Shown in pieces: positions 7,783 to 64,000 of a stretch of DNA of 64,000 bases (position 1 is its first letter; every line of letters begins with the position of its first letter). Position numbers and translations under genes: made by a program. A model generated the notes under the pieces. It was not told the origin of the DNA. It did not search any database and worked only from the letters and a program-made list of their open reading frames with translations. The stretch spans positions 62,001 to 126,000 of IMG/VR virus record IMGVR_UViG_3300012988_000001, one strand, 5' to 3'.

Positions 7783-7814
7783 AATTTTGTCTCCTTAAAA
7801 GAGTTATATAAAAA

Positions 7815-7820
7815 TATTTA
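7815..7820 (-). promoter_or_regulatory. putative late promoter TAAATA
   Basis: Same core about 30 nt upstream of 7782. Confidence 0.5.
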
Positions 7821-7840
7821 CTAAAAAATATTGATTTCTC

Positions 7841-7870
7841 TTGACATACGCCGGGGTAAAGATCTATAAT
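7841..7870 (+). promoter_or_regulatory. sigma70-type promoter
   Basis: TTGACA-18 nt-TATAAT. Confidence 0.75.
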
Positions 7871-7920
7871 TTCACACATCGCAGAAAACTGTGGTAAAAA
7901 ATATTGCATTCAAAAATGTT

Positions 7921-7948
7921 GGGACAAACGAAAAAAATGTGATATAAT
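7921..7948 (+). promoter_or_regulatory. GGGACA-class promoter (copy 1)
   Basis: TTGGGACAAAC...TGTGA-TATAAT, 16-nt spacer. Confidence 0.8.
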
Positions 7949-7957
7949 AATGATGTA

Positions 7958-7975
7958 GACAGCGATGTAGCTGTC
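7958..7975 (+). promoter_or_regulatory. GAUGUA-loop leader hairpin (copy 1)
   Basis: GACAGC-GATGTA-GCTGTC upstream of NadM-Nudix. Confidence 0.65.
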
Positions 7976-8006
7976 GGTAATGAAATAACTAAGGAGTACT
8001 TAGAAA

Positions 8007-40256: not shown

Positions 40257-41504
40257 ATGAGTGATGATCACTTAAAAGGCCAGATCGTAAAACACTACGC
40301 TGGTTCCCACGCTTACGGTACGAGTACTCCAGAAAGTGATGTTGACTTTCGAGGTATTTTCCTTGCCGAAAAGAAATTTGTCCTTACCCCGTTCTTTAAC
40401 GTTAGAGAAGTAAATGACCCAAATGAAGAAGATACCAAATTCTTCGAACTAAGTCATTTTATGGAACTATGCGTTGACGCTAACCCAAACATCCTAGAAA
40501 CTCTATGGGTAGATGAACAAGATATCGTCCAACGAAATGAAATGTATGACCATTTACGTTCATACCGGGACGACCTATTGAGTACTAAGATTGCTTATAC
40601 TTACACTGGTTATGCACACAACCAAGCTACTCGTATGAAAAACCATCATGGGTGGATGGCGAAAGAGCAGGTTGCGGAACGCAGACTACGTGAAATCTAT
40701 GAAAAATATCCGTGCAAACAAGTAATTGATTGGATGTATTCTTACTTCCCTCATTACGTTGTTGACCGCATTGATACTTCTGCTGGTCAGAATGTATATG
40801 TAAAAGGTCTAATTGACTTCGATAAGTTCCTTCGCGATAGCTCACTTCAGCTTATCAGTACTACCTCGTTATCACAGCACCACTTCGTGCGTTTAGTGCA
40901 TAACTACTTACCACAGAAAGTACTTGATCGTGATTTCAACCTATTGAATTACAACCACGGCTATGAACTAATTCACTACGGTGATAACATCTTTGCTATT
41001 ATCCAAAACGAAGATACTAAGACTATTGGTGGTCATGGTGAAATTGTTTGGGATAGTAAGAAAGAGCGTACACCTGAAGAATTAAAAGTAATTCCTTCTC
41101 TAATTGTCAAATTCAACAAGAAAGAGTTTGAAGAACTAAACGAAAATCGCAAGCATTACCACGAATGGAAGAAGAACCGTAACACTAAACGTTCGGAACT
41201 AGAATCCCTAAATGGTTATGATACAAAACACGCTATGCATGTAGTTCGTCTACTACGCACTGCCGAAGAAGCATTAGAAACTGGTGTAGTTAATGTACGC
41301 CGTCCTGATGCAAAAGAACTTCTTGAGATCCGTAATGGTGCATGGAGTTATGATGAGATGTTGGCGTACTTCGAAGCGAAGGACAAATACATCAAAGAAG
41401 TAGCGGTGAAAAATTCATCCCTCCGCAAACGTGCTGACATTAAAGTAGCCGCAAAAGTGATGGAAGAGTTATATGAAATGTATTGGTATAAAGGTAATAA
41501 GTAA
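40257..41504 (+). CDS. RlaP/NrdC.11-type pol-beta nucleotidyltransferase
   Basis: AGSHAYGTSTPESDVDFRGIF, ANPNILETLW, KHAMHVVRLL, ELLEIRNGAW. Confidence 0.88.
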   Translation: MSDDHLKGQIVKHYAGSHAYGTSTPESDVDFRGIFLAEKKFVLTPFFNVREVNDPNEEDTKFFELSHFMELCVDANPNILETLWVDEQDIVQRNEMYDHLRSYRDDLLSTKIAYTYTGYAHNQATRMKNHHGWMAKEQVAERRLREIYEKYPCKQVIDWMYSYFPHYVVDRIDTSAGQNVYVKGLIDFDKFLRDSSLQLISTTSLSQHHFVRLVHNYLPQKVLDRDFNLLNYNHGYELIHYGDNIFAIIQNEDTKTIGGHGEIVWDSKKERTPEELKVIPSLIVKFNKKEFEELNENRKHYHEWKKNRNTKRSELESLNGYDTKHAMHVVRLLRTAEEALETGVVNVRRPDAKELLEIRNGAWSYDEMLAYFEAKDKYIKEVAVKNSSLRKRADIKVAAKVMEELYEMYWYKGNK

Positions 41505-45610: not shown

Positions 45611-45614
45611 ACTT

Positions 45615-45643
45615 GGGACAAACGGGTTTTTTTGTGATATAAT
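45615..45643 (+). promoter_or_regulatory. GGGACA-class promoter (copy 4) driving the ncRNA
   Basis: TTGGGACAAACGGG...TGTGA-TATAAT, 17-nt spacer. Confidence 0.82.
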
Positions 45644-45649
45644 ATAGTT

Positions 45650-46135
45650 GAGGAATATCCTCAGTGTATAACCAATCCTGAATGACATGCGAAAGCGTGA
45701 GATTTTGAACCTGATCCTATCGAAAAGTAGATGGCAGTTGAGTAGTTCATTCAGTACGATGTGCAAAAGAAACCCGTCAGAAATAAAGCGTAAGTGTTTG
45801 TCAAATCCAACGAGACAGTAAATCACACGCATCACGGCAATGCGGCACAATAAATGCAGTCATCAGACTTGAACTGCACTAGATAGACATATGAGGCATA
45901 CTCACCCAGTCAAAGGGAGTCTCTTTACGGAGAGACAACAGTATTTGTTGCTGAATTAGCGAGTACTGTATGCGTGTGAGGAACACGACCGTTGTATGCG
46001 ACTGTAGTAGATGGAAACCGGACAACCCGCCATCGTTACTTTTATTTCAAATGGATACCTGTATCCAAAATTTGAGTAAATCTACAAATTCAGATTGGTT
46101 ATACTACCAGTGTCAGGTTTATCCTGATTTTTTTT
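45650..46135 (+). ncRNA. putative large structured non-coding RNA (~480 nt), family unassigned
   Basis: No plausible ORF; own promoter and terminator; 17-bp helix 45666-45683/46088-46104; GAAA and UACG tetraloop hairpins; 10-bp helix 45823-45832/45970-45979; many further stems. Confidence 0.8.
46113..46135 (+). terminator. intrinsic terminator of the ncRNA
   Basis: TCAGG-TTTAT-CCTGA-T8. Confidence 0.7.
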
Positions 46136-49226: not shown

Positions 49227-49504
49227 TGCCAAAAGTTATTATCGCAGCAATCCTAGAAAATTTCAGTACTGCATCAGATTTCGTTATTGATGATACTACC
49301 GTAGTAGAAAGTATTGATGAAATGAATACCTATATTCGTGACAATCGTGATGAATCAATGGGCGTAGTATTTGAATTCTTTTTCACCACTGATCCAGAAA
49401 TTAATTATGGTAGTGGCATTGAAGCACAAATGGATGCAATGGTGGATGCAACACCGATATCTTATCAAACTGCTCTATTGACTTTATGCAGTACTGGTGT
49501 ATAA
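49226..49504 (+). CDS. hypothetical acidic protein
   Basis: Coupled start. Confidence 0.65.
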   Translation: MPKVIIAAILENFSTASDFVIDDTTVVESIDEMNTYIRDNRDESMGVVFEFFFTTDPEINYGSGIEAQMDAMVDATPISYQTALLTLCSTGV

Positions 49505-49506
49505 AA

Positions 49507-49986
49507 ATGTATACAGTAATCTTTTTACGGGAACGCTCACAGGAACAGTATAATGGTGCTATCCATGTTGAGTGTTTCGAAACTGAGAAAGAAGTTCGCA
49601 ATTTCATTCGATTCAAAACCTTCTCACAAGAACGTTCTGATAGTGATGCGAACCGATATTTTGGGGACCGTCACTACTACGGCGACTACGGCTTTTTAGT
49701 ACTAAAGGACGGAGAGACTGTTTACAATTCCAACTTTGATTGTTCGATGGATGAAGTAGAGGTTCCAGTATGGTCAGATAACAGAATTGATTGTTATGAA
49801 GACCGTGCAGCGGGTGTAAATCAGAATGCTCGGTTGAATGGAATATTCCATGCATTAGAGAAAGTAGAAAAAGAATACAATGAATCTCTTCAGTCATATC
49901 GCGAAGAGGTTAAAAAACAAGCAGAAATTGCTAAAGAAAAAGCCTTACTTAAGACTCTTCTTGAAAAGTATCCTGATATGAAATAA
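49507..49986 (+). CDS. hypothetical protein
   Basis: C-terminal coiled coil. Confidence 0.7.
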   Translation: MYTVIFLRERSQEQYNGAIHVECFETEKEVRNFIRFKTFSQERSDSDANRYFGDRHYYGDYGFLVLKDGETVYNSNFDCSMDEVEVPVWSDNRIDCYEDRAAGVNQNARLNGIFHALEKVEKEYNESLQSYREEVKKQAEIAKEKALLKTLLEKYPDMK

Positions 49987-50002
49987 TGAGGTAAATACAC
50001 AT

Positions 50003-50374
50003 ATGGCTAGGGGTTATTGGAGTAAACGGGGTCACACTCTTAATGGGTTGAATCCGAATACACGAATTACTAAAACCGATAAAGATGGAAATCTTATTGA
50101 CCTACCGAGTATGTCTCTTACGCAGTATTGGGAGATAAGAAAATTACCTTTTGGTTCTGTACGGAGACAAGCGATTGTCCAGTTGTTACAGACTGGATAT
50201 TTAATTCCTGTAAATGGTATTGGGTGCATTCAATTGAATGCTGACAAAGACTTACAGAAATTGCTTAAAGAAAATAAAATTGAAATCTACAATGAGAGAA
50301 GTAGTAGTCATTTCAAAAGAACTATAGTAAGGTATAAGCATGGAAGCGAAAGACGTAAGCGGAAAAGAAATTAA
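50003..50374 (+). CDS. hypothetical basic protein
   Basis: RBS GAGGT. Confidence 0.7.
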   Translation: MARGYWSKRGHTLNGLNPNTRITKTDKDGNLIDLPSMSLTQYWEIRKLPFGSVRRQAIVQLLQTGYLIPVNGIGCIQLNADKDLQKLLKENKIEIYNERSSSHFKRTIVRYKHGSERRKRKRN

Positions 50375-50540
50375 AATTGATGATATCGTGGCATTTGGTC
50401 ATGACAACGGTAGCACACTAATGAGGGGTAAAATCTACAAAGTTACCCAGAAAAAAGTGTGGATGCACCCTATTATTAAGGGCGTTGTCGGAGACACTAC
50501 TTATTGCCGCGATCATGATCGCGTCAGTAAGGTCGATTAA
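50340..50540 (+). CDS. small hypothetical protein (SH3-like beta pattern)
   Basis: D.SGKEIKIDDIVAF...GKIYKVT.KKV. Confidence 0.6.
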   Translation: MEAKDVSGKEIKIDDIVAFGHDNGSTLMRGKIYKVTQKKVWMHPIIKGVVGDTTYCRDHDRVSKVD

Positions 50541-50725
50541 TGTCTGAAGATGAAATAAAAGAACTAATCAAGAAAGAAATTCTTGAGAACATGTGTGTTT
50601 CTGTTAGTATAACAGCAGAACCATACTCAAATAACGAGTACTTCAACGTAAACGTAGATATCGAATACGATGGAGAAAAACTCAATAGTTACGGTGATAG
50701 TATTCGTATCCCGGACAACAACTAA
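50540..50725 (+). CDS. hypothetical protein
   Basis: 61 aa, coupled. Confidence 0.6.
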   Translation: MSEDEIKELIKKEILENMCVSVSITAEPYSNNEYFNVNVDIEYDGEKLNSYGDSIRIPDNN

Positions 50726-51012: not shown

Positions 51013-51453
51013 ATGCTTACTATTATGAACATTATTTCGTTAGCAATATTCTTGGTTCCGGCAGCATATTACGATTGGTTGGGTGAAACTATCCAATATA
51101 AGCTAGTAAACTTTGGTGAAGTGAATGATCAGTATGATCGTGAACTACTACTTGCAATTGCATTAGTACAGGCAGGTAAAGGTCAAGCTGAATTTAGTAC
51201 TGAAGGATTTATTCGTATTAGTACCGAAGATTCTAGTTTTACCATCTATGCACAAGATTACCGTAATGAAATGTTTGGTGTATGTTATCGTTATCAGAAA
51301 AATAACTACAGTCAACGTCGTGAAGGTATTCTATCGTTGAATACTCGTAAGTACTTACGTGAGTTCAAGGAACAACATTTGGGTATTCGTGATCCAAGTA
51401 GTATCCAAAAATCATTATTCAATTTCAAGAAAGAAAAGGTAACAATTCAATGA
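51013..51453 (+). CDS. hypothetical protein with N-terminal membrane anchor
   Basis: RBS GGAG. Confidence 0.7.
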   Translation: MLTIMNIISLAIFLVPAAYYDWLGETIQYKLVNFGEVNDQYDRELLLAIALVQAGKGQAEFSTEGFIRISTEDSSFTIYAQDYRNEMFGVCYRYQKNNYSQRREGILSLNTRKYLREFKEQHLGIRDPSSIQKSLFNFKKEKVTIQ

Positions 51454-51788
51454 GTTTTGTACAAGTAAACGAAGTAGAAACATTTTACGCTAACATTCAC
51501 GTGGCTGGCGATTACGATGTAGCACGTGCTGCGTGTCGTGAAATTGCGTATGGATTTGGCTTCTGCTTCCAGTTACATAAAGTAGATTACATCTACACTG
51601 GTGGTGAGGAAACTGGTCTATTGATTCGTGTAATTAACTATCCACGTTTCCCTCGCAGTCCAGAAGAGATCACGCGGCCAACAGTAGAGTTTGCTAAAAT
51701 TATCGCTGATAAATTATGCCAAAAGAGCTTTACAGTCGAAACGAAGACTGATACAATGTACTTCGAAAGCGACAAGCATACCAAATAA
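51450..51788 (+). CDS. conserved phage hypothetical protein
   Basis: YIYTGGEETG...INYPRFP. Confidence 0.7.
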   Translation: MSFVQVNEVETFYANIHVAGDYDVARAACREIAYGFGFCFQLHKVDYIYTGGEETGLLIRVINYPRFPRSPEEITRPTVEFAKIIADKLCQKSFTVETKTDTMYFESDKHTK

Positions 51789-51796
51789 GGGGTAAT

Positions 51797-52399
51797 ATGT
51801 TAATCACGATTGCATCATATGTTGCGACCGCAGTTCTACCATTCGCAACATACATTGGATATAAACACTATATCAATCGCAATATACCAAAAGTACTTGC
51901 GAAGCCACCAGAACCTTCTGAGGCTGAAGTGGTAGAACTACCAACATCTGGTTTATCGGTGATTGAATACAATATCCCGGAAGAGACAGAAGAAGAGTAC
52001 TTGAAACGCCTGAAGTTCATTCATAGTGAAGCATGGCAGGAGTACCAAAATTACTATAAATCTCGTAAACTACTTGAAGCCCCAGATCGTTTCGTAAACT
52101 TGCTTCTTTTGAAGCTACGCAATGGTGAAGTATCTATGGAGTGTCGCCAGCATACAATGAATTTCTCTGATGGTACTGAAATTTGGATTGCAAACAAGTA
52201 CTACGGTTATGGAAACGTATATGAATGTAAACGTCCCGGCATCAAATTTGATTCCAGTGATGGTCGCCTATCTCCATATACTTTCATGACGATTGTGGAC
52301 TTGAATATGGAACGCACTAACTTCGCAGAGTGGAAACAACACCATGACGATTACTCTCGCCGCCGGGTAAAGGGCATTAAAGCCCTATTGAGAAAGTAA
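51797..52399 (+). CDS. hypothetical protein with N-terminal membrane anchor
   Basis: 200 aa. Confidence 0.7.
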   Translation: MLITIASYVATAVLPFATYIGYKHYINRNIPKVLAKPPEPSEAEVVELPTSGLSVIEYNIPEETEEEYLKRLKFIHSEAWQEYQNYYKSRKLLEAPDRFVNLLLLKLRNGEVSMECRQHTMNFSDGTEIWIANKYYGYGNVYECKRPGIKFDSSDGRLSPYTFMTIVDLNMERTNFAEWKQHHDDYSRRRVKGIKALLRK

Positions 52400-53463: not shown

Positions 53464-53710
53464 AGTACATCAAACTAGATTGAAGTGCTTTTTGAATCCT
53501 AAACTCAGGGCAATTCAATTCTGGACTGATGAACCATATGTAGTCGCTTCACGATTTGATAACGGTGTGTTCATAACTTACGTAATAACTCGTGTGAAGT
53601 ATGATAAGAAAACCATTTACAATAACGATTTAGTACTAACTAAAATTGAAGTACATAAACCGTTCTATAAAACTATTAAACACATTTGGAGAAAATTATG
53701 GCAGAACTAG
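53456..53710 (+). CDS. hypothetical protein
   Basis: 84 aa. Confidence 0.6.
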   Translation: MNRVHQTRLKCFLNPKLRAIQFWTDEPYVVASRFDNGVFITYVITRVKYDKKTIYNNDLVLTKIEVHKPFYKTIKHIWRKLWQN

Positions 53711-54954
53711 TAACTGAAGGTCGTAAACTTGTAACTATCCGTAAAATCAATGCGATTGATGCGATTGAGGGTGCTGACCTGATCGTAAAAGCAACCGTAG
53801 ATGGTTGGGAAGTAATCGTGAAAAAAGGTGAATTCGAAGTTGGTGATTTCTGTGTATTCTTCGAAATCGATTCCTTCCTACCAGTACAGACACAACAATT
53901 CGCATTCCTAGCTGGCAGCGGTACTAAACTCGATGAGAAAGAAGTAGAGCGTTTCCGTCTACGTACCAAGAAACTACGCGGTGTTGTCTCTCAGGGTCTA
54001 GCACTACCTGTATCTATGTTCGAAGCAGAACTAGAAGCAATTGATGAAGCTGCGGGTAATCACCCTGATTCTTATAGCCTAGCTATTCGTGATCAGCTAC
54101 TAGCACAGCTAGAAGATTCTCGTGAGGGTATTGAACAATTCCTACACGTAACTAAGTACGAACGTCCTGATGAGCGTAATGGCGGTACTGGTCTAGGTAA
54201 ATGTAAAGCGGCTGGTAACTTCCCTATCGTTATTCCTAAGACTGACGAAGACCGTATCCAGAACGTAATGGGTAAGTACATCCAGACTATGAAGGGTGTT
54301 GGTTTCCGTAAGTCTCTAAAACTAGATGGCTCTAGCCAAACTATTGCTTTCATGAGCAACCCAGATTACTACGTTGAGAAGGTTGATGATGAAGTACGTG
54401 CATGGAACGAAGAAACTCAAGAACTAGAAATCGTTGAAGTTAAACCGTATCCATTCCAGTGGGAAGATGGTCAGATTTCTATCTGCTCTCGTAACCTAGC
54501 ACTAAAATTCGATCCCGAATCTCACTTCTGGAAAGCAGCACTAAAAGATGATATCCCAGCACGTCTAAAAGAGTACTGTGTAGCTCATGATCGCCAGCTA
54601 GCTATCCAAGGTGAAGTAATGGGTCCGGGCATTCAGGGTAACCGTGAAGAACTAGAAGATTACCAGTTCTACGCATTCCGTATCTGGGACATTGACAACC
54701 GTTGCTTCCTTGATGACGGCGATTTCTTAACTCTTTGTGCACTACTAGGAGTAACTACAGTACCACAAGGTGATATTGTATACTTCTTCGATGAATATAC
54801 TTCTATCAAAGAAGCGGTAGAATCTGCTGACCATGCATCTATCAAACACAAGATCGCAGAAGGTGATGTATACAAGAGTGTTACTAAAGTGAATGGCGTA
54901 ACTGTGCACTTTAAAGTGATTAACAATAAATTCTTGCTAAAATGTGAGGACTAA
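53698..54954 (+). CDS. RNA ligase, DRB0094/Rnl5 family
   Basis: N-terminal OB module RKLVTIRKI..I..I.GAD...VDGW..IVKKGEF...VFFEIDS; motif I KLDGSS, QGEVMGPGIQGN, FYAFRIWD, EGDVYK, FKVINNKFLLK. Confidence 0.92.
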   Translation: MAELVTEGRKLVTIRKINAIDAIEGADLIVKATVDGWEVIVKKGEFEVGDFCVFFEIDSFLPVQTQQFAFLAGSGTKLDEKEVERFRLRTKKLRGVVSQGLALPVSMFEAELEAIDEAAGNHPDSYSLAIRDQLLAQLEDSREGIEQFLHVTKYERPDERNGGTGLGKCKAAGNFPIVIPKTDEDRIQNVMGKYIQTMKGVGFRKSLKLDGSSQTIAFMSNPDYYVEKVDDEVRAWNEETQELEIVEVKPYPFQWEDGQISICSRNLALKFDPESHFWKAALKDDIPARLKEYCVAHDRQLAIQGEVMGPGIQGNREELEDYQFYAFRIWDIDNRCFLDDGDFLTLCALLGVTTVPQGDIVYFFDEYTSIKEAVESADHASIKHKIAEGDVYKSVTKVNGVTVHFKVINNKFLLKCED

Positions 54955-54955
54955 T

Positions 54956-55453
54956 ATGCAATACACGTTGAAATCTTACTTTTGTAAGTACAAGATTAAT
55001 GCTCAGGAATTTACTGATATTGAGCTTGAAGCTATTTTGAGTTTGTGTAATAGTTCTGGTATTGAAAATAGTTTTTATACGGCCCAATCATTCCGTAATG
55101 CAGAATTTCATTATTTGACAGCCGTCGATCATGGTGATAAAGTTGCAAAATGTTCACAACATAATACTAAACGTGTAAATGTATCACGTGAGCAAGTGAT
55201 TGATGATTTAAAACTTTATGAAAAAAGTTCGGTTTTTATCAAACAGTCAACGACGGAAACTGATTCTCTAGTAGTATCTGTTTATAGTAGTGGTCACCCA
55301 CACTATTTTACTTATGCTTTTGACTTCAACACAAAAGTAACATACTGTTTAGTAGGAAATCAGTTCTGGGTACGTGCATCACAGAATTTCACTGAAAAGG
55401 AAATATTTAATATGCTTACGATTCAACAAGATGTTGAAATCGTTGTAAACTAA
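54956..55453 (+). CDS. hypothetical protein
   Basis: 165 aa. Confidence 0.65.
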   Translation: MQYTLKSYFCKYKINAQEFTDIELEAILSLCNSSGIENSFYTAQSFRNAEFHYLTAVDHGDKVAKCSQHNTKRVNVSREQVIDDLKLYEKSSVFIKQSTTETDSLVVSVYSSGHPHYFTYAFDFNTKVTYCLVGNQFWVRASQNFTEKEIFNMLTIQQDVEIVVN

Positions 55454-55460
55454 AAAATAT

Positions 55461-55499
55461 GCAGTTTGTTTCAAAAACTTGGGACAAACTGCTTTTTTT
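55461..55499 (+). terminator. intrinsic terminator containing the -35 of the next promoter
   Basis: GCAGTTTGTTTCAA-AAAC-TTGGGACAAACTGC-TTTTTTT. Confidence 0.8.
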
Positions 55500-55509
55500 G
55501 TGCTATAAT
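55481..55509 (+). promoter_or_regulatory. GGGACA-class promoter (copy 5)
   Basis: GGGACA-17-TATAAT, TGTGC before the -10. Confidence 0.8.
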
Positions 55510-55571
55510 TAAGTTATTAAGAAATGAGTCAACACTCAAACCAAATTATCCATTTCTGAGAGGTAGAAAAT

Positions 55572-57106
55572 ATATGTCATTCAAACAAGCAGTTATCAAC
55601 GAAACCACCGCAGCAACCGACAACGTAGCTTTCACGGCTAACGGTGCAGTCTCAAACGCAAGCTCCCTCAACTTCCTAGTTGATCTATTTGCGATTCTAG
55701 GTGCAGTTCGTGGTAAAGATTTCTCTACCTTTGAGAATCTATTCGAACAAGCATATTCCATGAACCGTAAGCTAACGCTTCAAATGGTTCTATGGGTACG
55801 TGATGTTCGCGGTGGTGCAGGTGAGCGTGAAACCACACGTCAAATCCTTCGTCACCTAGAAGCAAACCATCAACAGGATCTAGTAGAACTAATCCCAGTA
55901 CTCGCAGAGTATGGTCGTTGGGATGATCTTCTAATTTTCACTAACGATAATGTGAAGAACTTTGCTTATGCAACTATTTCTGCTAATCTAAAAGCTGGTA
56001 ACGCACTATGTGCTAAATGGATGCCTCGCGTCTATAAGCTCAAAAAAGGTGCTGATGGTACAGTGAACAAAGAATCGGTTGCAAACCAGAACCGTATTGC
56101 GAACAATCAAATTGCTCGTGAGCTAATGCAAGTGATGGGTCTAAACGAACGTCAGTACCGCAAACTACTAGCTTCTCTAAGCACTACGGTTGAACAAAAC
56201 ATGTGTGCTAAAGATTGGTCTAGTATTGAGTACTCTCATGTTCCATCTGTAGCAATGAACCGCTACCGTGCTGCTTTCATGCGTAACGACGAAACTCGTT
56301 TCACTGAATTCGGTAACAAGGTAGAAGCTGGTGAAGTTAAGGTTAATGCTTCGGCACTATTCCCTTACGATGTAACCACTAAGTTCAAGTACGGTCAATC
56401 CGACAAGGTTTTTGTTGGTCAGTGGGATGCTCTACCAGACTACTTAAACGGTGCTTCAATCCTACCAATGTGTGATACCAGTGGTTCGATGGAATGTCCA
56501 GCAGGTGCATCAGGCTCCCTAACTTGTATGGATGTAGCGGTTTCTCTAAGCCTCTATATTTCTGACAAGCAGAAAGGTGCGTTCAAGGACGTGTTCTTGA
56601 ACTTCAGCGAGTCTCCCAACTTGTTCGTACTTAAGGGTAAGAACATCGAAGAGAAGTATCGCGACCTCTGCAAGTACAAGGGTGGTGCGTACTGGGGTGG
56701 TTCTACTGATATCGGTAAGGCTTTCCACCACATCCTAAAAACTGCTGTGAAGCAGAACGTGCAACAACAGGATATGCCTGAATATCTACTAATCTTTAGC
56801 GATATGGAGTTCGACTCTACATATGCTTGGGGTGGTGTAGAGAACAACGGTAACTGGGATGTAACTGCTTATGAGTATGCTAAACAGCTATACGCTCAGA
56901 ACGGTTATGAACTACCTAAAGTTATCTTCTGGAACCTAAATGGTCGTCCGGGTAACAACCCTGTCACGATCCACGATACTGGCACTGCTATGGTATCTGG
57001 TTTCAGTCCAGCAATCCTAACTGCAATCCTAGCTGGTGAGCAAGTAGATCCTGTATCTATCATGCTAGCAGCAATTGATAAGCCTCGCTATCAAGTGATT
57101 GCATAA
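55572..57106 (+). CDS. Ro60/TROVE-like HEAT-repeat plus vWA protein (DUF2828 type)
   Basis: RDVRGGAGER, YGRWDDLL, CAKWMPR, IEYSHVPSVAM, MIDAS CDTSGSM, IFSDMEFD, FWNL; ATG 55572 behind GAGGT. Confidence 0.82.
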
Positions 57107-57113
57107 GATTACC

Positions 57114-57141
57114 GCCCCACACTTAGTGGGGCTTCTCATTT
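57114..57141 (+). terminator. intrinsic terminator
   Basis: GCCCCAC-ACTTA-GTGGGGC-TTCTCATTT. Confidence 0.7.
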
Positions 57142-57153
57142 CAAGGACTAAAT

Positions 57154-57294
57154 ATGAAACAAGTACGCAATTTCCTCTTTGCCTCTTATTTGAACTTTCG
57201 AGTATCTACGGCAATCAATCCTGTACTAACTACTTTACTCGCTGCTGTGAGTGTGGTATTCTTATATTCTGTGTTGAAAATATTCGGACTATAA
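57154..57294 (+). CDS. 46-aa membrane peptide (below the ORF-track cutoff)
   Basis: RBS AAGGA; MKQVRNFLF...VLTTLLAAVSVVFLYSVLKIFGL. Confidence 0.6.
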   Translation: MKQVRNFLFASYLNFRVSTAINPVLTTLLAAVSVVFLYSVLKIFGL

Positions 57295-57297
57295 GAG

Positions 57298-57714
57298 ATG
57301 AAAGAATACATTGAGATCGAAGGTATCATACGATACGACCCTCCCAGACATGGGATGAAACGGAACACGAACTACTGGTGTATTCTAGAATTACCTGAAG
57401 ATTTAGTTAAGTACTACCAGTACTTCGTAAAGACTGATTTACATATTCCCATCGCAGACCCTTCTTGGGGAGCACACGTCAGTATTGTACGTGGTGAGAC
57501 ACCACCTAATCCTGAAGTGTGGAAAAAGTACGATGGAAAGAAAGTAAAGATAAAATACTATCCTTACATTCATGTGAAGAAAGATCCGAAGAAAGAAGGA
57601 TTGTACTGTTTTATTGATTTTGAAGTCCCGTTCTTTCGTCAGATACGAAAAGAGCTAGGACTAGAATGTAAATATACTTTCCATTTTACTATTGGAAGAA
57701 CGCACTATGATTAG
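57298..57714 (+). CDS. 2H phosphoesterase (second copy)
   Basis: AHVSIV and FHFTIG (HxS/HxT). Confidence 0.75.
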   Translation: MKEYIEIEGIIRYDPPRHGMKRNTNYWCILELPEDLVKYYQYFVKTDLHIPIADPSWGAHVSIVRGETPPNPEVWKKYDGKKVKIKYYPYIHVKKDPKKEGLYCFIDFEVPFFRQIRKELGLECKYTFHFTIGRTHYD

Positions 57715-58297
57715 TAAAGACGTATTTTGTATTTTATATCATGGGATGCCAATTGAAGGATTCTCTTCTGCGTCCGGGCATCCCATTTTTACCAGTAATG
57801 ATAAGTTCATCCCAAATTACTCATTCAGTAGCTACGAAAGTGCTAGAGATAGTTTAACTTATATGATACAATCATTACTTGACCAGAATCATGACAGTAC
57901 TGACATGAGCTTAGTCAGCATCGGAAATATCCGAATGGAATGTAGAGAATTTACTCACATTTCTGCGTATGATGAAGCCTTGATGAACATCATGAAAAAC
58001 CAGTATAATAATCCTGCGATGATTGATCGTTATGTAGGAAAGATTATACATTTGTGTGTACGTAAGGGATTCAAAAAAACTCTCCCCCAAATGCACCAAC
58101 AATTACTCAATGACCCACAATTTGTAGAGTTACTTGATAAACATGTTCCTTTCTTTGTTCGACAGAATATTGAAAGATTCATGGATGTAGGAATTAGTGC
58201 TTGCAATGAAGAAGAGATTGCTGCTATAATTCTTACAACAGACGATGAGCTATTAAAAGTGATTCGTATAGATTCATTAAACAATGTTTCGAATTAA
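57707..58297 (+). CDS. hypothetical protein
   Basis: 196 aa. Confidence 0.65.
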   Translation: MISKDVFCILYHGMPIEGFSSASGHPIFTSNDKFIPNYSFSSYESARDSLTYMIQSLLDQNHDSTDMSLVSIGNIRMECREFTHISAYDEALMNIMKNQYNNPAMIDRYVGKIIHLCVRKGFKKTLPQMHQQLLNDPQFVELLDKHVPFFVRQNIERFMDVGISACNEEEIAAIILTTDDELLKVIRIDSLNNVSN

Positions 58298-58396
58298 CTC
58301 TTAGAGTTAAAGTAGAAAGTCCAACGAGGCTTTGTGCAAACACGGCCTCACTGTAGTCCCGTTTGTCAAGGTTTCCAAAACAAAAAGGAGAAATCA

Positions 58397-59317
58397 GTGA
58401 AAGCGATCCAAAAACTGAAAACTTTACTTTTAGTAGGTTTTCTGTTAGCGGTAGCTGCTATTGGATTTATTGGTTATAAACACAATGATCGTACACCGTC
58501 ATCAAATTTAGGTGTACAACAAGTTATTCAAATTCAAAAGCAACCGCCCGTAACGTCATTGCCAGTTCAATTAGCAACTGTCAAAGGAACTAAGACGGAA
58601 AGCAGAAAGCAGTATGTTGTCCAGAAGGGTGACACATTTTGGGTCATAGCCCAAAAAACTAAACCAATGAATGTTGAGATGTATCCGTACATTGATGTAT
58701 TCAAACAAATCAATGGTAGTATTAAAGTACTAAACGTTGATAAGCCTGTACACTTACCAAATGAGAATGATTTGAAGTCTGTTATTCTTCCAGATGTAAC
58801 ACTACATTTCGATCATCTTGACGACGAACTGATAGAGTTCATCAAACAGTCTGAAGGTTCTAAAGAACTTCAATCTGTTTTAAAAAGAAAATTACTTGGT
58901 GGAAAAGTCGGTCCATCATATAAAAATTCAAAGTTCTATCCATATAAAGATATGAAAGGTAACTATACTATTGGTTATGGTCATTATCTAGGAAAGAAAG
59001 AATCCGACGCAAATAAGTACAAAAATGGTATTACTGAGTATCAAGCGAAGAAAATACTAAAAGCTGATATGAAGCGTACTTATGATGACTTCACGTTACT
59101 ACTGCAACGTAAAAACGCAGTAAACCTTACGAAAGACCAGCAACGTATTTTATACGATATGGCTTATTCAATGGGTGTTGACAAACTTGATAAGTTTACA
59201 CGTCTATGGAAAGCTGTACAGCATGGTAATGATCGTAAATTCAAAAAAGAAATTGAAGGTTCTTTATGGTTCAAGCAAGTTGGGAACCGTGCTGAAATCC
59301 TTCTAAGTTCCCTATAA
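58397..59317 (+). CDS. membrane-anchored LysM plus T4-type lysozyme
   Basis: GTG start behind AAGGAG; N-terminal hydrophobic helix; LysM YVVQKGDTFWVIA; lysozyme SEG...YKD.KG.YTIGYGH...MAYSMG...SLWFKQVGNRA. Confidence 0.85.
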   Translation: MKAIQKLKTLLLVGFLLAVAAIGFIGYKHNDRTPSSNLGVQQVIQIQKQPPVTSLPVQLATVKGTKTESRKQYVVQKGDTFWVIAQKTKPMNVEMYPYIDVFKQINGSIKVLNVDKPVHLPNENDLKSVILPDVTLHFDHLDDELIEFIKQSEGSKELQSVLKRKLLGGKVGPSYKNSKFYPYKDMKGNYTIGYGHYLGKKESDANKYKNGITEYQAKKILKADMKRTYDDFTLLLQRKNAVNLTKDQQRILYDMAYSMGVDKLDKFTRLWKAVQHGNDRKFKKEIEGSLWFKQVGNRAEILLSSL

Positions 59318-59327
59318 GGAGTTGTGT

Positions 59328-59648
59328 ATGATTACTATTCAAGGTATCAATGTAGAAGTAACCGATGCTATTAAAGAGCACATTGAACATAATGTAGGTA
59401 AACTTTCTAAGTACAACACTAAAAACGATCTCAACATCAAAGTAAATTTGAAGGTTGAAACTAAAGATACTTTTGACGTAGATGTTATTGTTGAAGGTAA
59501 AAACATTTCTGGTGGTGCTGTTAGTGATGACATGTACACTGCTATTACCATGTCATTTGAAAATGTGGAAACTATTCTAGCTCGTCGTAAGGGCAAAGAA
59601 CTTTCCAAACGTCATGAAAAAATTCAGTTGACAGACGCAGAAGAATAA
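59328..59648 (+). CDS. hpf: ribosome hibernation promoting factor (HPF/RaiA family)
   Basis: ITIQGINVEVTDAIKEHI...KL.KY...SDDMYTAI......L.RRKGK. Confidence 0.85.
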   Translation: MITIQGINVEVTDAIKEHIEHNVGKLSKYNTKNDLNIKVNLKVETKDTFDVDVIVEGKNISGGAVSDDMYTAITMSFENVETILARRKGKELSKRHEKIQLTDAEE

Positions 59649-61108: not shown

Positions 61109-62233
61109 ATGAAAAAATATATCGTCGGTGGTTTTGTACGTGATAAACTACTTGGCCTAAAACCAAAAGACAAAGACTACGTACTTGTAGGAGCCAAACA
61201 GCGTGATATTGATTATCTAACGTCCCAAGGCTACAAACAAGTAGGTGCTGACTTCCCTGTATACTTATCTCCAGCAGGTGATGAGTATGCTCTTGCACGT
61301 GTTGAGCGTAAGACGGGTAACGGATATAAAGGTTTTACTGTAGATACCGAAGGTGTAACTCTTGAACAAGATCTATTCCGTCGAGATCTCACTATCAACG
61401 CCATTGCCTACGATCCAGTATTCCAAAAACATATCGACCCATATGGTGGTAAGTCCGATCTACAGAATAAAGTACTACGTCATGTTAGTCCTCACTTTGC
61501 TGAAGACCCACTACGTATCCTACGTCTAGCTCGCTTTGCTGCTCGTTATAGCGATTTCACTATTCATAGCAGTACTGAAGAACTAGTACTCAACATGGTA
61601 AAAGAAGGTATGATTGACCATCTTACCCCGGAACGTGTATATGTAGAATTCGAAAAAGCTCTATCCGAGAATAATCCAAGTATTTTCTTCAAGAACCTAC
61701 GTAAATGGGGTGCTCTAGAACGCCTCCTACCGGGTTTGGAAGCCTTTAATAAGGCAGATGGGGAAATGCTCGATAAAATCACACAGACCAGCACAGAGGC
61801 TTACACGAACGATTTTCAGTGGTCTTTCCTACTATCCATGAGTCGTGGTGTAGTATCTAAAGATTATGCTATTGGTCAATTGAAACTACCTGCACAAGCA
61901 GTGAAGTTCTTCAAGTTTGTTACTGCTAACTTTGAAGAGATCAAGCTATTCAGGAAGAAAACACCTGAACAGATGGTTGAAATGCTAACTAAACTAAATA
62001 TCCACAACAACGGTGGTGAGGAATTCTTGTACAAAGTACTTGAGTACTTCAACATTCAGCGTGATACGGATGGTGAGCTAGAAGACCTAATTGTGAAAGT
62101 GTACGATAAATTTGAAGGCACTGTGATTGGTGATATTGACCAGATGTTGAAAGACGGAACTTTAGAGCCTAAAGAAATCCGTGCATATGTGTCGAATCTT
62201 CGCACAACTGAAGTTGCGAAAATGTTCTCATAA
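61109..62233 (+). CDS. cca: class II tRNA nucleotidyltransferase (CCA-adding), no HD domain
   Basis: YIVGGFVRD.LLG...KDKDY, EYALAR.E.K, DLFRRDLTINA, F.EDPLRILR.ARF, LTPERV..E. Confidence 0.93.
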   Translation: MKKYIVGGFVRDKLLGLKPKDKDYVLVGAKQRDIDYLTSQGYKQVGADFPVYLSPAGDEYALARVERKTGNGYKGFTVDTEGVTLEQDLFRRDLTINAIAYDPVFQKHIDPYGGKSDLQNKVLRHVSPHFAEDPLRILRLARFAARYSDFTIHSSTEELVLNMVKEGMIDHLTPERVYVEFEKALSENNPSIFFKNLRKWGALERLLPGLEAFNKADGEMLDKITQTSTEAYTNDFQWSFLLSMSRGVVSKDYAIGQLKLPAQAVKFFKFVTANFEEIKLFRKKTPEQMVEMLTKLNIHNNGGEEFLYKVLEYFNIQRDTDGELEDLIVKVYDKFEGTVIGDIDQMLKDGTLEPKEIRAYVSNLRTTEVAKMFS

Positions 62234-62297: not shown

Positions 62298-62741
62298 ATG
62301 CGATATACTTGCGGAATAATATTTTATCGTGATGGTCAGATACTTATAGGACATACAACCGGACAAGATCATTGGGACTTACCTAAAGGTAAAACTGAAG
62401 GTGAAGAAACATATAAAGAAGCGGCTGTTCGGGAGTGTTATGAAGAAACTGGTTTTGAGATATCCGAGAAGGATTTACTTTTTATTGGTGATGTATCATA
62501 CCGAAAAGGAAAAAGACTTATATTGTTTTTCTATACCGCTAGATATAAGCCTGAACCTAGTGAATTGAAATGTATCAGTACTTACACTAATAAGTACGGA
62601 CAGACTAAACCAGAATTGGATAAGTTTAGATACATTGATGTTGAGGACTGTGAATTGTATTTGACTAAACGAATGTGTAGCAGTATTGTCAAAGCTGTTA
62701 AACAATTCCAGAAAAATAAAGGAAAAGAGAATGGAAGTTAA
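62298..62741 (+). CDS. Nudix hydrolase
   Basis: WDLPKG..EG.ET..EAAVRECYEETG. Confidence 0.9.
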   Translation: MRYTCGIIFYRDGQILIGHTTGQDHWDLPKGKTEGEETYKEAAVRECYEETGFEISEKDLLFIGDVSYRKGKRLILFFYTARYKPEPSELKCISTYTNKYGQTKPELDKFRYIDVEDCELYLTKRMCSSIVKAVKQFQKNKGKENGS

Positions 62742-63003
62742 AATCTACGGACGCCTAACTGGTTGCCCTTATTGCACAAATGCGAAAGCAGTTTGTGAAC
62801 AAAATAAATTCGATATGGAATTCATTGATATGGTTTCCACTGGTATGACTAAAGATGATCTATGTGAAATCGTAGGTAAGCCAGTAAGCACTGTTCCACA
62901 AATCTTTGTTGATGGTGAATATGTTGGTGGTTACACTGAATTCGTTGCTCACCTCCGCTCTCTAAACGAGAAGAAAAAAGAAGATGACACAGACGATCAA
63001 TGA
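62731..63003 (+). CDS. glutaredoxin
   Basis: CPYC, TVPQIFVDGEYVGG. Confidence 0.93.
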   Translation: MEVKIYGRLTGCPYCTNAKAVCEQNKFDMEFIDMVSTGMTKDDLCEIVGKPVSTVPQIFVDGEYVGGYTEFVAHLRSLNEKKKEDDTDDQ

Positions 63004-63232
63004 TTTTCATGCACAGTGTAAAGCACGTGCTGAAGAGTTAGCCAAACGATTGGGGGTAGATTTTCAACCTCTAGATGTAAACTCTATTGAAACTGCTGCA
63101 CGGAAACGTATGGCAGCACTCATGAAATATCGTGAGCGAAAAGAAGAGTATGATTCTCTTCTTGAAACAGTTTTCAAAGTACTAAGTCCAACGGAAGTGG
63201 TTGAAATTCTACGAAATACCCGTAATAAATAA
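62984..63232 (+). CDS. hypothetical protein
   Basis: 82 aa. Confidence 0.65.
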   Translation: MTQTINDFHAQCKARAEELAKRLGVDFQPLDVNSIETAARKRMAALMKYRERKEEYDSLLETVFKVLSPTEVVEILRNTRNK

Positions 63233-63279
63233 TTATGAAGGAACAATCCTTCATGTTATAAAATTTTGGGAGAAATACT

Positions 63280-63522
63280 ATGATTAGTTTTCGTGATAAA
63301 TTAGCTCAAGGCATTTTCGAATGCAAACCAACAGTTGCTGACATTCCAAAGAAATCAGCATTTTTAGGAACAATTACAGAAGATGGTTTCTGTGATTATG
63401 ATGTACCTGAAGATACTTGGTATCTAAGTAAATCAACTGAACGTAGCAATCGCCTCCACAAAAGTACAATAGCCAGAAAACACCGCAAGGAAATGAAACG
63501 AATTCGTTTTGGTTCCGAATAA
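63280..63522 (+). CDS. hypothetical protein
   Basis: 80 aa, RBS GGGAG. Confidence 0.65.
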   Translation: MISFRDKLAQGIFECKPTVADIPKKSAFLGTITEDGFCDYDVPEDTWYLSKSTERSNRLHKSTIARKHRKEMKRIRFGSE

Positions 63523-63528
63523 TAATTT

Positions 63529-63556
63529 AAAGGACTCTATATAAGAGTCCTTTTTT
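63529..63556 (+). terminator. intrinsic terminator
   Basis: AAAGGACTCT-ATATA-AGAGTCCTTTTTT. Confidence 0.88.
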
Positions 63557-63570
63557 CATCCGAGGTAACA

Positions 63571-64000
63571 ATGGGCGTAATAGAACATATTGGTAATCTT
63601 TTTGAAAGATACAGTGATGGTTTTTCTCCTGACCATCTTCATATCATTGTACATGGGTGCAATGCACAAGGTCGTATGGGTTCAGGGTTTGCGAAAGAAT
63701 TACGCGAACGTTACCCGGATGCATACACAACTTACAACGATGCCTACAAGTTCGCCGGACTTAAGCTAGGCTCTACGATTTACCACATAGTCGATGATAA
63801 TTTAGTGATTGCAAACGCTATCACACAGGAGTATTATGGCTATGACGGTGAGAAATATGTTAGCTATGATGCTATCGATACCGTCTTTAAAGACATGAAT
63901 GAGTTTATAGCTCAAACTGGACGGATGACGCACCTCCACTTCCCCCGCCTTGGGGCAGATCTTGGTGGTGGTAATTGGACAGTGATAAAGAATATCATTG
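63571..64000 (+). CDS. macrodomain (ADP-ribose processing) protein, 3'-truncated by the window edge
   Basis: GNLF...IVHGCNAQGRMGSGFAKEL...ANAITQ...YD.I...FPRLGADLGGGNW; absent from the ORF track because it lacks a stop. Confidence 0.9.
   Translation, partial: MGVIEHIGNLFERYSDGFSPDHLHIIVHGCNAQGRMGSGFAKELRERYPDAYTTYNDAYKFAGLKLGSTIYHIVDDNLVIANAITQEYYGYDGEKYVSYDAIDTVFKDMNEFIAQTGRMTHLHFPRLGADLGGGNWTVIKNII

What the first reader, a model, noticed from the sequence alone, without database searches (positions are those of the whole stretch)
53698..57714. RNA-repair cluster: Rnl5-type ligase, Ro/TROVE-like protein and 2H phosphoesterase
Seen: three genes within 4 kb, with the CCA enzyme 3.4 kb further on. 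Established: 2H enzymes open 2',3'-cyclic phosphates, Rnl5 seals 3'-OH/5'-P ends, and bacterial Ro60 genes cluster with RNA ligases and Y RNAs. I see no Y RNA or tRNA adjacent to the Ro-like gene. Inference: a tRNA/RNA healing-sealing-tailing system against anticodon nucleases, with the 45650-46135 RNA as a candidate scaffold.
Basis: inference. Interest (0 to 1): 0.6.

Follow-up and report, generated by a model that had tools for sequence, protein, structure and literature searches.

The report
Jumbo-phage RNA ligase, Ro-like, 2H genes
A giant (366 kb) Rak2-like phage carries a nick-sealing RNA ligase, a Ro60-shaped RNA-binding ring protein and a small 2H phosphoesterase side by side, a plausible but untested RNA repair and quality-control gene set of a kind already described for jumbo phages.

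Summary
All three genes are real and correctly typed. 53698-54954 is an Rnl5 nick-sealing RNA ligase. 55574-57106 is a DUF2828/DUF7788 protein whose predicted structure matches Ro60 over its full length, with an intact MIDAS site. 57298-57714 is a minimal 2H phosphoesterase with both H-x-S/T motifs invariant. The CCA enzyme lies 3.4 kb downstream, and no tRNA or Y RNA is nearby.

- The cluster has no 5' kinase or phosphatase. A T4-like Rnl1 plus Pnkp pair, the classic answer to anticodon nucleases, sits about 65 kb away.
- Characterised Rnl5 enzymes seal nicks in duplexes, not loop breaks.
- Terminator and promoter signals split the three genes into separate transcription units.
- Sister phages carry Rnl5 alone or 2H alone.
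- The 2H fold cannot be told apart from anti-signalling phosphodiesterases such as Acb1.
- The 45650-46135 RNA is a real, conserved, structured RNA, but it occurs in phages that lack the Ro-like gene.

The general idea (jumbo-phage RNA repair with a TROVE protein, 2H and a CCA enzyme) was published in 2021, and a phage Ro60 was characterised in 2025. Verdict: a new member of a known kind, of moderate-to-low interest.

The parts
53698..54954 (+). Rnl5-type ATP-dependent nick-sealing RNA ligase (418 aa): N-terminal OB-like domain plus nucleotidyltransferase domain, motif I KLDGSS
54944..55453 (+). 169-aa ORF of unknown function that overlaps the ligase stop. Only its C-terminal ~55 aa match the short ORF (phrog_23174) found at this position in relatives.
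55461..55509 (+). Intrinsic terminator hairpin (55461-55492 plus T-run) overlapping a phage promoter (TTGGGACA at 55479, extended -10 TGTGCTATAAT at 55499-55509). This is a transcription-unit boundary, not a Y RNA.
55574..57106 (+). Ro60-like ring protein (510 aa), DUF2828 plus DUF7788: HEAT-repeat toroid plus vWA domain with MIDAS residues D301-x-S303-x-S305, T378, D410
57114..57132 (+). Intrinsic terminator-like hairpin directly after the Ro-like gene
57154..57294 (+). 46-aa hydrophobic small ORF, annotated 'membrane protein' in phage PHA46 and conserved between the Ro-like and 2H genes
57298..57714 (+). Minimal 2H phosphoesterase (138 aa), closest Pfam family 2H-SAK; catalytic H60-V-S62 and H129-F-T131
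57707..58297 (+). 196-aa ORF of unknown function that overlaps the 2H stop by 8 nt. It belongs to a narrow family and has no fold or family assignment.
59322..59648 (+). Ribosome hibernation factor homologue (S30AE/HPF), part of the same translation and RNA gene island
61109..62233 (+). Class II CCA-adding tRNA nucleotidyltransferase (head plus RNA-binding domains; no HD domain matched)
62298..62741 (+). Nudix hydrolase
63571..63999 (+). Macro-domain-like protein (matches the DarG N-terminal domain, E 1.6e-8); runs off the window end

Best explanation
The three genes form a lineage-specific RNA-maintenance neighbourhood in a Rak2-like jumbo phage. It is not one operon and not a complete pathway. 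I infer that it serves repair and quality control of structured RNAs (tRNA, rRNA) cut by metal-independent RNases during infection.

Proposed steps (all inferred):
1. The Ro-like ring captures the 3' end of a damaged or misfolded RNA.
2. The 2H enzyme opens the 2',3'-cyclic phosphate.
3. The phage's own Pnkp, encoded about 65 kb away, removes the phosphate and phosphorylates the 5'-OH.
4. Rnl5 seals the break where the ends are held in a duplex (stems, not loops).
5. The CCA enzyme restores trimmed tRNA 3' ends.

Shown here: gene identities, folds, catalytic motifs, synteny and presence/absence patterns. Inferred: every biochemical step and any cooperation between the proteins.
For: - Gene typing: Rnl5, Ro60 fold with intact MIDAS site, 2H fold with both motifs invariant.
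- 35 of 42 members of the 2H family hit only Pfam 2H-SAK, the 2H domain of 'Swiss Army Knife' RNA repair proteins.
- The order Rnl5, Ro-like, 2H..., CCA, Nudix is conserved in nine IMG/VR relatives and in the 7t3, Munch, PHA46, Kae01, GAP32 and Yen9-04 phages.
- In the eight Rak2-like genomes checked, the Ro-like gene occurs only where both Rnl5 and 2H are present.
- The genome supplies the missing kinase and phosphatase, Pnkp, plus Rnl1.
- Elsewhere, DUF2828 genes lie next to RtcB or Rnl5 and inside tRNA arrays.
- The concept is published for jumbo phages (PMC7824862).
Against: - A terminator and promoter between the genes point to separate transcripts.
- Rnl5 alone (EJP2, Hallingskeid) and 2H alone (121Q, SD-15_S21, KP13-7-like) show that each gene works without the others.
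- Only 3 of 71 non-Rak2 DUF2828 loci have a detectable ligase within 10 kb, and none has a 2H.
- Common neighbours in those loci are DnaJ, Nudix and RNase HII.
- There is no experimental datum for any of these proteins.
- T4-type Pnkp can open cyclic phosphates by itself, so the 2H is not needed for the classic pathway (established knowledge).
Confidence: 0.45

Rival explanations
1. The three genes are unrelated neighbours in a mosaic accessory region.
- The 2H enzyme is an anti-signalling phosphodiesterase, degrading cyclic oligonucleotides, 2'-5' oligoadenylate-like molecules or ADP-ribose cyclic phosphates, as Acb1 does.
- The Ro-like ring acts like the Thermus phage phiRo60, binding small RNAs and sequestering or retargeting host PNPase, or it helps phage tRNA maturation.
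- Rnl5 acts on its own.
For: - The best structural neighbours of the 2H model include the anti-CBASS Acb1 (Foldseek rank 1, E 0.011; VIA Z 6.2), a Burkholderia phage phosphodiesterase and the MHV ns2 phosphodiesterase.
- The genes occur independently in sister phages.
- Transcription signals separate them.
- DUF2828 genes associate more with tRNA arrays than with ligases.
- phiRo60 binds Y-like RNAs and attenuates PNPase (PMC12135203).
- Nudix and macro-like genes downstream fit an NAD/ADP-ribose theme.
Against: - The 2H family has no sequence affinity to T4 Acb1 (hhalign probability 2%). Its only Pfam match is the RNA-repair-linked 2H-SAK.
- Distant 2H homologues lie beside RlaP and PTH2.
- In the eight Rak2-like genomes sampled, the Ro-like gene is never found without both Rnl5 and 2H.
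Confidence: 0.35
2. One reading: a self-contained healing-sealing-tailing system aimed at anticodon nucleases (PrrC, colicins, VapC), with the 45650-46135 RNA as the scaffold of the Ro-like protein.
For: - The enzyme types fit loosely.
- A CCA enzyme is nearby.
- The RNA is real and structured.
- Its promoter is of the same class as that of the Ro-like gene.
Against: - The cluster has no kinase or phosphatase.
- A dedicated Rnl1 plus Pnkp pair exists elsewhere in the genome.
- Characterised Rnl5 enzymes are feeble on single-stranded breaks, whereas Rnl1 handles loops (PMC4408790).
- The RNA is present in EJP2 and Hallingskeid, which lack the Ro-like gene.
- The promoter class has about 35 copies in the genome, so sharing it is not specific.
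- The RNA is about 486 nt and matches no Y RNA model.
Confidence: 0.1
3. An NAD-linked, plant/fungal-style pathway. The 2H enzyme leaves a 2'-phosphate that a Tpt1/KptA-like enzyme transfers to NAD. The resulting ADP-ribose cyclic phosphate is then processed by the 2H, macro and Nudix proteins.
For: - 2H, macro-like and Nudix genes lie within 6.5 kb.
- The scheme is discussed for jumbo phages in PMC7824862.
- A language-model search hinted weakly at ADP-ribosyltransferase-like features in ORF 57707-58297 (score 0.85-0.86).
Against: - No KptA/Tpt1 (PF01885) match anywhere in the genome.
- The ADP-ribosyltransferase hint is below the tool's own noise level and was not backed by Pfam or PDB profile searches.
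- Rnl5 is not known to need a 2'-phosphate.
Confidence: 0.05

Closest known systems
Rnl5 nick-sealing RNA ligases (Deinococcus DraRnl, Naegleria NgrRnl)
   Same: - Same domain order: N-terminal OB-like domain, then the nucleotidyltransferase domain, with no C-terminal appendage.
- Motif I KLDGSS is present.
- The protein scores above the NCBIfam equivalog cut-off.
   Different: - Two insertions relative to NgrRnl, at about residues 110-143 and 217-255.
- It is encoded by a phage, next to a Ro-like gene.
- Its activity is untested.
Ro60/Rsr ring proteins with Y RNAs (Xenopus Ro60, Deinococcus Rsr, Salmonella rsr-yrlBA-rtcBA operon, Thermus phage phiLo phiRo60)
   Same: - Full-length predicted fold match: HEAT-repeat ring plus vWA domain with a MIDAS site.
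- The gene lies next to an RNA ligase, as rsr lies next to rtcB in Salmonella (established knowledge).
   Different: - No sequence-level match to TROVE or to solved Ro60 proteins. It belongs instead to the separate DUF2828/DUF7788 family.
- No Y RNA or YrlA model hit here or next to five other phage DUF2828 genes.
- The neighbouring ligase is ATP-dependent Rnl5, not RtcB.
T4 Pnkp plus Rnl1 tRNA healing and sealing pathway against PrrC
   Same: Same overall logic of end healing followed by sealing. The same phage genome does encode this pair.
   Different: The cluster under study has no kinase or phosphatase, and it uses a nick-sealing ligase rather than a loop-specific one.
2H phosphoesterases: 2H-SAK domain of 'Swiss Army Knife' RNA repair proteins, LigT/ThpR, and phage Acb1
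   Same: Two H-x-S/T motifs, the 2H fold, and a small size close to Acb1.
   Different: - The window protein scores just below the 2H-SAK gathering cut-off (24.6 against 27 bits).
- It has no sequence affinity to T4 Acb1.
- Its substrate is unknown.
Jumbo-phage RNA repair complement described by Iyer et al. 2021 (PMC7824862)
   Same: That paper lists RNA ligases, a ROT/TROVE protein in a subset of phages, 2H phosphoesterases, Pnkp-HAD and CCA-adding enzymes as counter-measures to host RNases.
   Different: The paper does not name Rnl5, does not describe this gene order, and does not report the presence/absence mosaic found here.

Membership tests
Rnl5 RNA ligase | N-terminal OB-like domain fused to a nucleotidyltransferase domain, with no C-terminal appendage | tested here: met
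   PF21189 at residues 15-109 and PF09414 at 212-412. The alignment to NgrRnl 5cot runs end to end.
Rnl5 RNA ligase | Lysine adenylylation motif I (KxDG) | tested here: met
   KLDGSS aligns with KLDGSS of NgrRnl.
Rnl5 RNA ligase | Curated equivalog model score | tested here: met
   TIGR02306 scores 230.8 bits against a cut-off of 151.15.
Rnl5 RNA ligase | Seals 3'-OH/5'-PO4 nicks in duplexes with an RNA 3'-OH strand | not testable with these tools
   This needs an enzyme assay. The property is known for DraRnl and NgrRnl (PMC4408790, PMC5397189).
Ro60 / TROVE | Ring of HEAT repeats closed by a vWA domain | tested here: met
   The predicted model (pLDDT 86.7) matches 1yvr and 2i91: Foldseek E 3.5e-8, VIA Z 21.8 over 413 aa spanning residues 13-490. 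This rests on a prediction, not a solved structure.
Ro60 / TROVE | MIDAS motif in the vWA domain | tested here: met
   D301, S303, S305, T378 and D410 are invariant in 34 sequences.
Ro60 / TROVE | Sequence membership in the Pfam TROVE family, or similarity to solved Ro60 proteins | tested here: not met
   Pfam reports only DUF2828 and DUF7788. phmmer and a profile search against the PDB give nothing better than E = 1.
Ro60 / TROVE | A partner Y RNA encoded nearby | tested here: not met
   No Rfam Y RNA or YrlA hit in the window, in about 95% of the genome, or beside five other phage DUF2828 genes. An undescribed partner RNA is not excluded.
Ro60 / TROVE | Binds misfolded RNA 3' ends in the central cavity | not testable with these tools
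   This needs RIP/CLIP or a binding assay.
2H phosphoesterase | Two H-x-T/S motifs | tested here: met
   H60-V-S62 and H129-F-T131 are invariant in 42 homologues.
2H phosphoesterase | 2H fold | tested here: met
   18 of the 20 best VIA matches, including the first 12, are 2H enzymes, Z 6.4 to 3.8. The Z values are modest.
2H-SAK (Pfam PF22547) | Score above the gathering cut-off | tested here: inconclusive
   The window protein scores 24.6 bits against 27. 35 of 42 family members match at E <= 0.01, and no other Pfam family matches.
Acb1 anti-CBASS nuclease | Sequence relationship to T4 gp57B, or a specific structural match | tested here: inconclusive
   hhalign probability is 2%. The structural match (Z 6.2) is no better than to other 2H enzymes.
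Complete RNA healing-and-sealing system (T4 type) | A 5' kinase and a 3' phosphatase encoded with the ligase | tested here: not met
   No such domain was found in any ORF from 53.4 to 62.7 kb. Pnkp lies at G000 51364-52293, about 65 kb upstream.
CCA-adding enzyme | Class II nucleotidyltransferase head plus RNA-binding domain | tested here: met
   PF01743 and PF12627; phrog_2244 at E 3e-110.

The most novel reading that the evidence does not exclude
The DUF2828 Ro-like ring, Rnl5 and the 2H enzyme act as a Y-RNA-independent phage repair particle. In this reading the conserved ~486-nt structured RNA at 45650-46135, which tracks Rnl5 across sister phages, supplies the complementary strand or scaffold that holds broken RNA ends in a duplex for the nick-sealing ligase.
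Probability: 0.05. Interest if true: 0.8.

Novelty: new member of a known kind. Interest (0 to 1): 0.33.

Why it matters
The physiological substrates of Rnl5 ligases and the role of the very large DUF2828 Ro-like family are both unknown. That family has more than 7,500 proteins at E <= 1e-10 and occurs in 710 phage records.

This phage group offers natural genotypes for comparison: Rnl5 only, 2H only, or all three genes. Cultured relatives exist on Salmonella, Klebsiella and Erwinia hosts. The cooperation hypothesis could therefore be tested genetically.

The practical gain for annotation is modest. The 2H gene is still labelled 'hypothetical' in relatives, and the Ro-like gene is sometimes labelled 'structural protein'.

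Tried and rejected
- **Y RNA in the gaps flanking the Ro-like gene.** The upstream gap is a terminator plus promoter. The downstream gap holds a terminator and a 46-aa ORF.
- **Rfam scans.** The window was scanned at gathering score, 44-64 kb at E <= 5, and a further 283 kb of the genome at gathering score. Only tRNAs were found, plus one chance-level sRNA hit over the terminator. Genome positions 343.8-366.2 kb were not scanned.
- **Complex prediction, Ro-like protein with 2H.** Score 0.00; the tool gave no verdict either way.
- **ORF 57707-58297 as a Tpt1- or ADP-ribosyltransferase-like enzyme.** The language-model hint (0.85-0.87) is within noise. Pfam and PDB profile searches were empty.
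- **KptA and RtcB in the genome.** Both absent.
- **Expression data.** No listed run that holds this DNA is on record as RNA; a few are only guessed to be RNA. All holders are kept as assembled contigs, which cannot show transcript ends.
- **Shared promoter as a link between the RNA and the Ro-like gene.** Rejected, because the promoter class has about 35 copies in the genome.
- **Neighbour survey of 71 non-Rak2 DUF2828 loci.** The recurring neighbours were DnaJ, Nudix, RNase HII, a metallopeptidase and unknowns, with no repair signature. The ligase seeds used there (Rnl5, Rnl1, RtcB) would miss divergent Rnl2-type ligases.
- **Burroughs and Aravind 2016.** This paper could not be read because it is not held.

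Full report
**Setting.** The window is bases 62001-126000 of a 366,160-bp phage genome with direct terminal repeats. Almost all genes lie on the + strand. Its nearest named relatives, at about 79% nucleotide identity, are the Rak2-like jumbo phages Salmonella 7t3, SE_PL, Munch and PHA46 and Klebsiella fENko-Kae01.

**Observation.** All three genes are real and correctly typed.
- **53698-54954** encodes an Rnl5 ligase. It has the Rnl5-specific N-terminal OB-like domain (PF21189, E 2.5e-33) and the RNA_ligase nucleotidyltransferase domain. It aligns end to end with the Naegleria Rnl5 crystal structure sequence (E 1.9e-39), with motif I KLDGSS conserved. It passes the curated DraRnl equivalog model, 230.8 bits against 151.
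- **The Ro-like gene** most likely starts at the ATG at 55574, behind a GAGAGG ribosome-binding site, giving 510 aa, against 505 aa for the PHA46 homologue. It matches DUF2828 and DUF7788 and phrog_850 'RNA-binding protein'. There is no sequence-level match to solved Ro60 proteins. However, an AlphaFold model built on 34 homologues (pLDDT 86.7) matches Xenopus Ro60 over its whole length: Foldseek E 3.5e-8, TM 0.59, and VIA Z 21.8 over 413 residues, twice the score of vWA-only hits. It also matches human Ro60, Deinococcus Rsr and the Thermus phage phiLo Ro60. The MIDAS residues D-x-S-x-S, T and D are invariant.
- **57298-57714** encodes a 138-aa protein whose only Pfam match is 2H-SAK, at 24.6 bits, just under the cut-off of 27. 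Both H-x-S/T motifs are invariant in 42 homologues. The model (pLDDT 91) finds 2H enzymes in 18 of its 20 best PDB matches, including the first 12.
- **The CCA enzyme** lies at 61109-62233.
- **No tRNA or Rfam family** is found in the window.

**Anatomy between the genes.**
- The 120-nt gap upstream of the Ro-like gene is an intrinsic terminator (55461-55492 plus T-run) overlapping a promoter with an extended -10 (TGTGCTATAAT). It is not a small RNA gene.
- A second terminator follows the Ro-like gene at 57114-57132.
- Next come a 46-aa hydrophobic ORF (57154-57294), the 2H gene 3 nt later, and a 196-aa unknown ORF that overlaps the 2H stop.
- By these pattern-level signals the cluster is three transcription units: ligase with ORF169; the Ro-like gene alone; and small ORF, 2H, ORF196, LysM-lysozyme and HPF together.
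- The promoter belongs to a phage-wide class (TTGGGACAAA, 10-12 nt, TGTGNTATAAT) with about 35 copies on the + strand. Several of these stand in front of tRNA genes.

**What the rest of the genome adds.**
- The phage also encodes a T4-like Rnl1 with its C-terminal tRNA-specificity domain, and a Pnkp with kinase and HAD phosphatase domains, at G000 49.4-52.3 kb. That is about 65 kb upstream of the cluster.
- This pair is the established counter to anticodon nucleases.
- The cluster itself has no kinase or phosphatase. The genome has no RtcB and no KptA/Tpt1.
- Fifteen tRNA genes lie at 273-312 kb.
- Published biochemistry shows that Rnl5 enzymes seal nicks in duplexes whose 3'-OH strand is RNA and are feeble on single-stranded RNA. 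Rnl1 and Rnl4 handle loop breaks. The physiological substrates of Rnl5 are unknown (PMC4408790, PMC5397189).

**Comparative evidence within the Rak2-like group.** The gene order Rnl5, Ro-like, 2H, then CCA and Nudix holds in the five named relatives, in GAP32 and Yen9-04, and in nine IMG/VR contigs. The genes are nevertheless separable, as whole-record searches show:

| Phage(s) | Rnl5 | Ro-like | 2H | Long RNA |
|---|---|---|---|---|
| Window phage, 7t3 group (7t3, SE_PL, Munch, PHA46, Kae01) and Yen9-04 | + | + | + | + |
| GAP32 | + | + | + | partial (3' two-thirds) |
| EJP2, Hallingskeid | + | - | - | + |
| 121Q, SD-15_S21 | - | - | + | - (78-nt module only) |

A KP13-7-like contig also has the 2H gene at the syntenic site without the ligase or the Ro-like gene next to it. 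In the eight genomes checked by whole-record search, the Ro-like gene is found only where both Rnl5 and 2H are present. That pattern is compatible with an accessory role. The sample is small, though, and the genomes are not independent.

**Comparative evidence across phages.**
- The Ro-like family is very large. More than 7,500 proteins score E <= 1e-10, and 710 phage records hold it. These include Felixounaviruses, KVP40-like vibriophages, Listeria, Staphylococcus, Enterococcus, Bacillus and Campylobacter phages, and mycobacteriophages, where it is annotated 'Ro-like RNA binding protein'.
- In UAB_Phi87 the gene sits directly upstream of the tRNA array. In Klebsiella KP2025 it lies inside the array. 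In Listeria LMTA-94 it lies after tRNAs and 1.3 kb before an RtcB ligase.
- Of 71 IMG/VR loci outside the Rak2 group (31 clusters at 80% identity), 32 have a tRNA within 10 kb and 10 have one within 1.3 kb. Only 3 have a detectable RNA ligase, and none has a 2H. Their recurrent neighbours are DnaJ, Nudix and RNase HII. I had no random-gene control, so the tRNA association is suggestive only.
- No Y RNA model matches beside the DUF2828 genes of five other phages.
- Distant homologues of the 2H protein lie near RlaP (twice, in one lineage), PTH2, or a PARP-like gene, and in one locus no informative neighbour was recorded.

**The 2H ambiguity.**
- The best Foldseek hit is the anti-CBASS nuclease Acb1, with a weak E of 0.011.
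- By VIA, Acb1 (Z 6.2) ties with the MHV ns2 phosphodiesterase, CNPase, Usb1 and LigT-type enzymes.
- The family shows no sequence affinity to T4 Acb1 (hhalign probability 2%).
- Its members match only 2H-SAK in Pfam (35 of 42).
- This leans towards an RNA-end enzyme but does not exclude an anti-signalling phosphodiesterase.

**The proposed scaffold RNA.**
- 45650-46135 is a genuine feature. It has a promoter at 45613-45643, a terminator at 46112-46128 and no ORF over 44 aa inside it. A 72-aa ORF runs through the terminator.
- Its folding z-score is -4.8.
- The same unannotated gap exists in nine phages of three genera, with long invariant blocks. The consensus structure has 97 pairs, 19 of them with compensatory changes.
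- It matches no Rfam family.
- Its 5' and 3' modules recur at other places in the genome.
- It is present in EJP2 and Hallingskeid, which lack the Ro-like gene. Its long form was not found (blastn) in 121Q and SD-15_S21, which lack Rnl5.
- It therefore does not correlate with the Ro-like gene. If it follows anything, it follows Rnl5, which lies only 8 kb away, so plain linkage is the simplest reason.

**Conclusion.**
An RNA repair and quality-control role is the best single reading (confidence about 0.45). However, the cluster is not a complete or co-transcribed system. It is unlikely to be the phage's anti-anticodon-nuclease device, and its link to the 486-nt RNA is not supported.
- A strong rival (about 0.35) is that the three genes act independently, with the 2H as an anti-signalling enzyme and the Ro-like ring acting on PNPase or tRNA maturation.
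- The general scheme is already published for jumbo phages (PMC7824862), and a phage Ro60 has been characterised (PMC12135203).
- This is a new member of a known kind.

Noticed in passing
window 45613-46135 (+); paralogous modules at G000 40919-41401, 187899-187974, 332816-332866, 269388-269463: A conserved ~486-nt structured non-coding RNA with its own promoter and terminator.
- Folding z-score -4.8; 97 consensus pairs, 19 with compensatory changes across nine phages of three genera.
- No Rfam match.
- Its 5' and 3' modules recur elsewhere in the genome, which suggests a family of modular phage RNAs of unknown function.
   Followed up: partly
G000 49416-50633 and 51364-52293 (L007:5417-6634 and 7365-8294), about 10 kb upstream of the window start: A T4-like RNA ligase 1 (with the Rnl1 C-terminal domain) and a polynucleotide kinase/HAD phosphatase. 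This is the classic tRNA healing-sealing pair, encoded apart from the Rnl5 cluster.
   Followed up: yes
whole genome, + strand; e.g. window 7919, 18428, 45613, 55479, 62236: A phage-specific promoter consensus, TTGGGACAAA, 10-12 nt, TGTGNTATAAT, occurs about 35 times. Copies stand before tRNA genes, the non-coding RNA paralogues and the Ro-like gene.
   Followed up: partly
window 58334-59648 and 62298-63999: A LysM-lysozyme, a ribosome hibernation factor (S30AE/HPF) homologue, a Nudix hydrolase and a macro-domain-like protein (DarG N-terminal match) flank the CCA enzyme. Together they form a translation, RNA and ADP-ribose themed island that is conserved even in sister phages lacking the ligase and the Ro-like gene.
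   Followed up: partly
L008 (UAB_Phi87), L011 (Klebsiella KP2025), L012 (Listeria LMTA-94); IMG/VR loci L050, L058, L064, L081, L103: DUF2828 Ro-like genes often sit inside or directly beside phage tRNA gene arrays. In these phages tRNA arrays, not RNA ligases, are the recurrent neighbours.
   Followed up: partly
G000 301949-302034: ARAGORN calls a tRNA-like gene with a four-base anticodon (ctgg) at the end of a run of tRNA genes. Rfam's tRNA model did not list it at gathering score.
   Followed up: no
window 54944-55453: The 169-aa ORF between the ligase and the Ro-like gene is about 100 aa longer than the 63-aa ORF at this position in PHA46 and fENko-Kae01. Only its C-terminal part is shared with them.
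   Followed up: no
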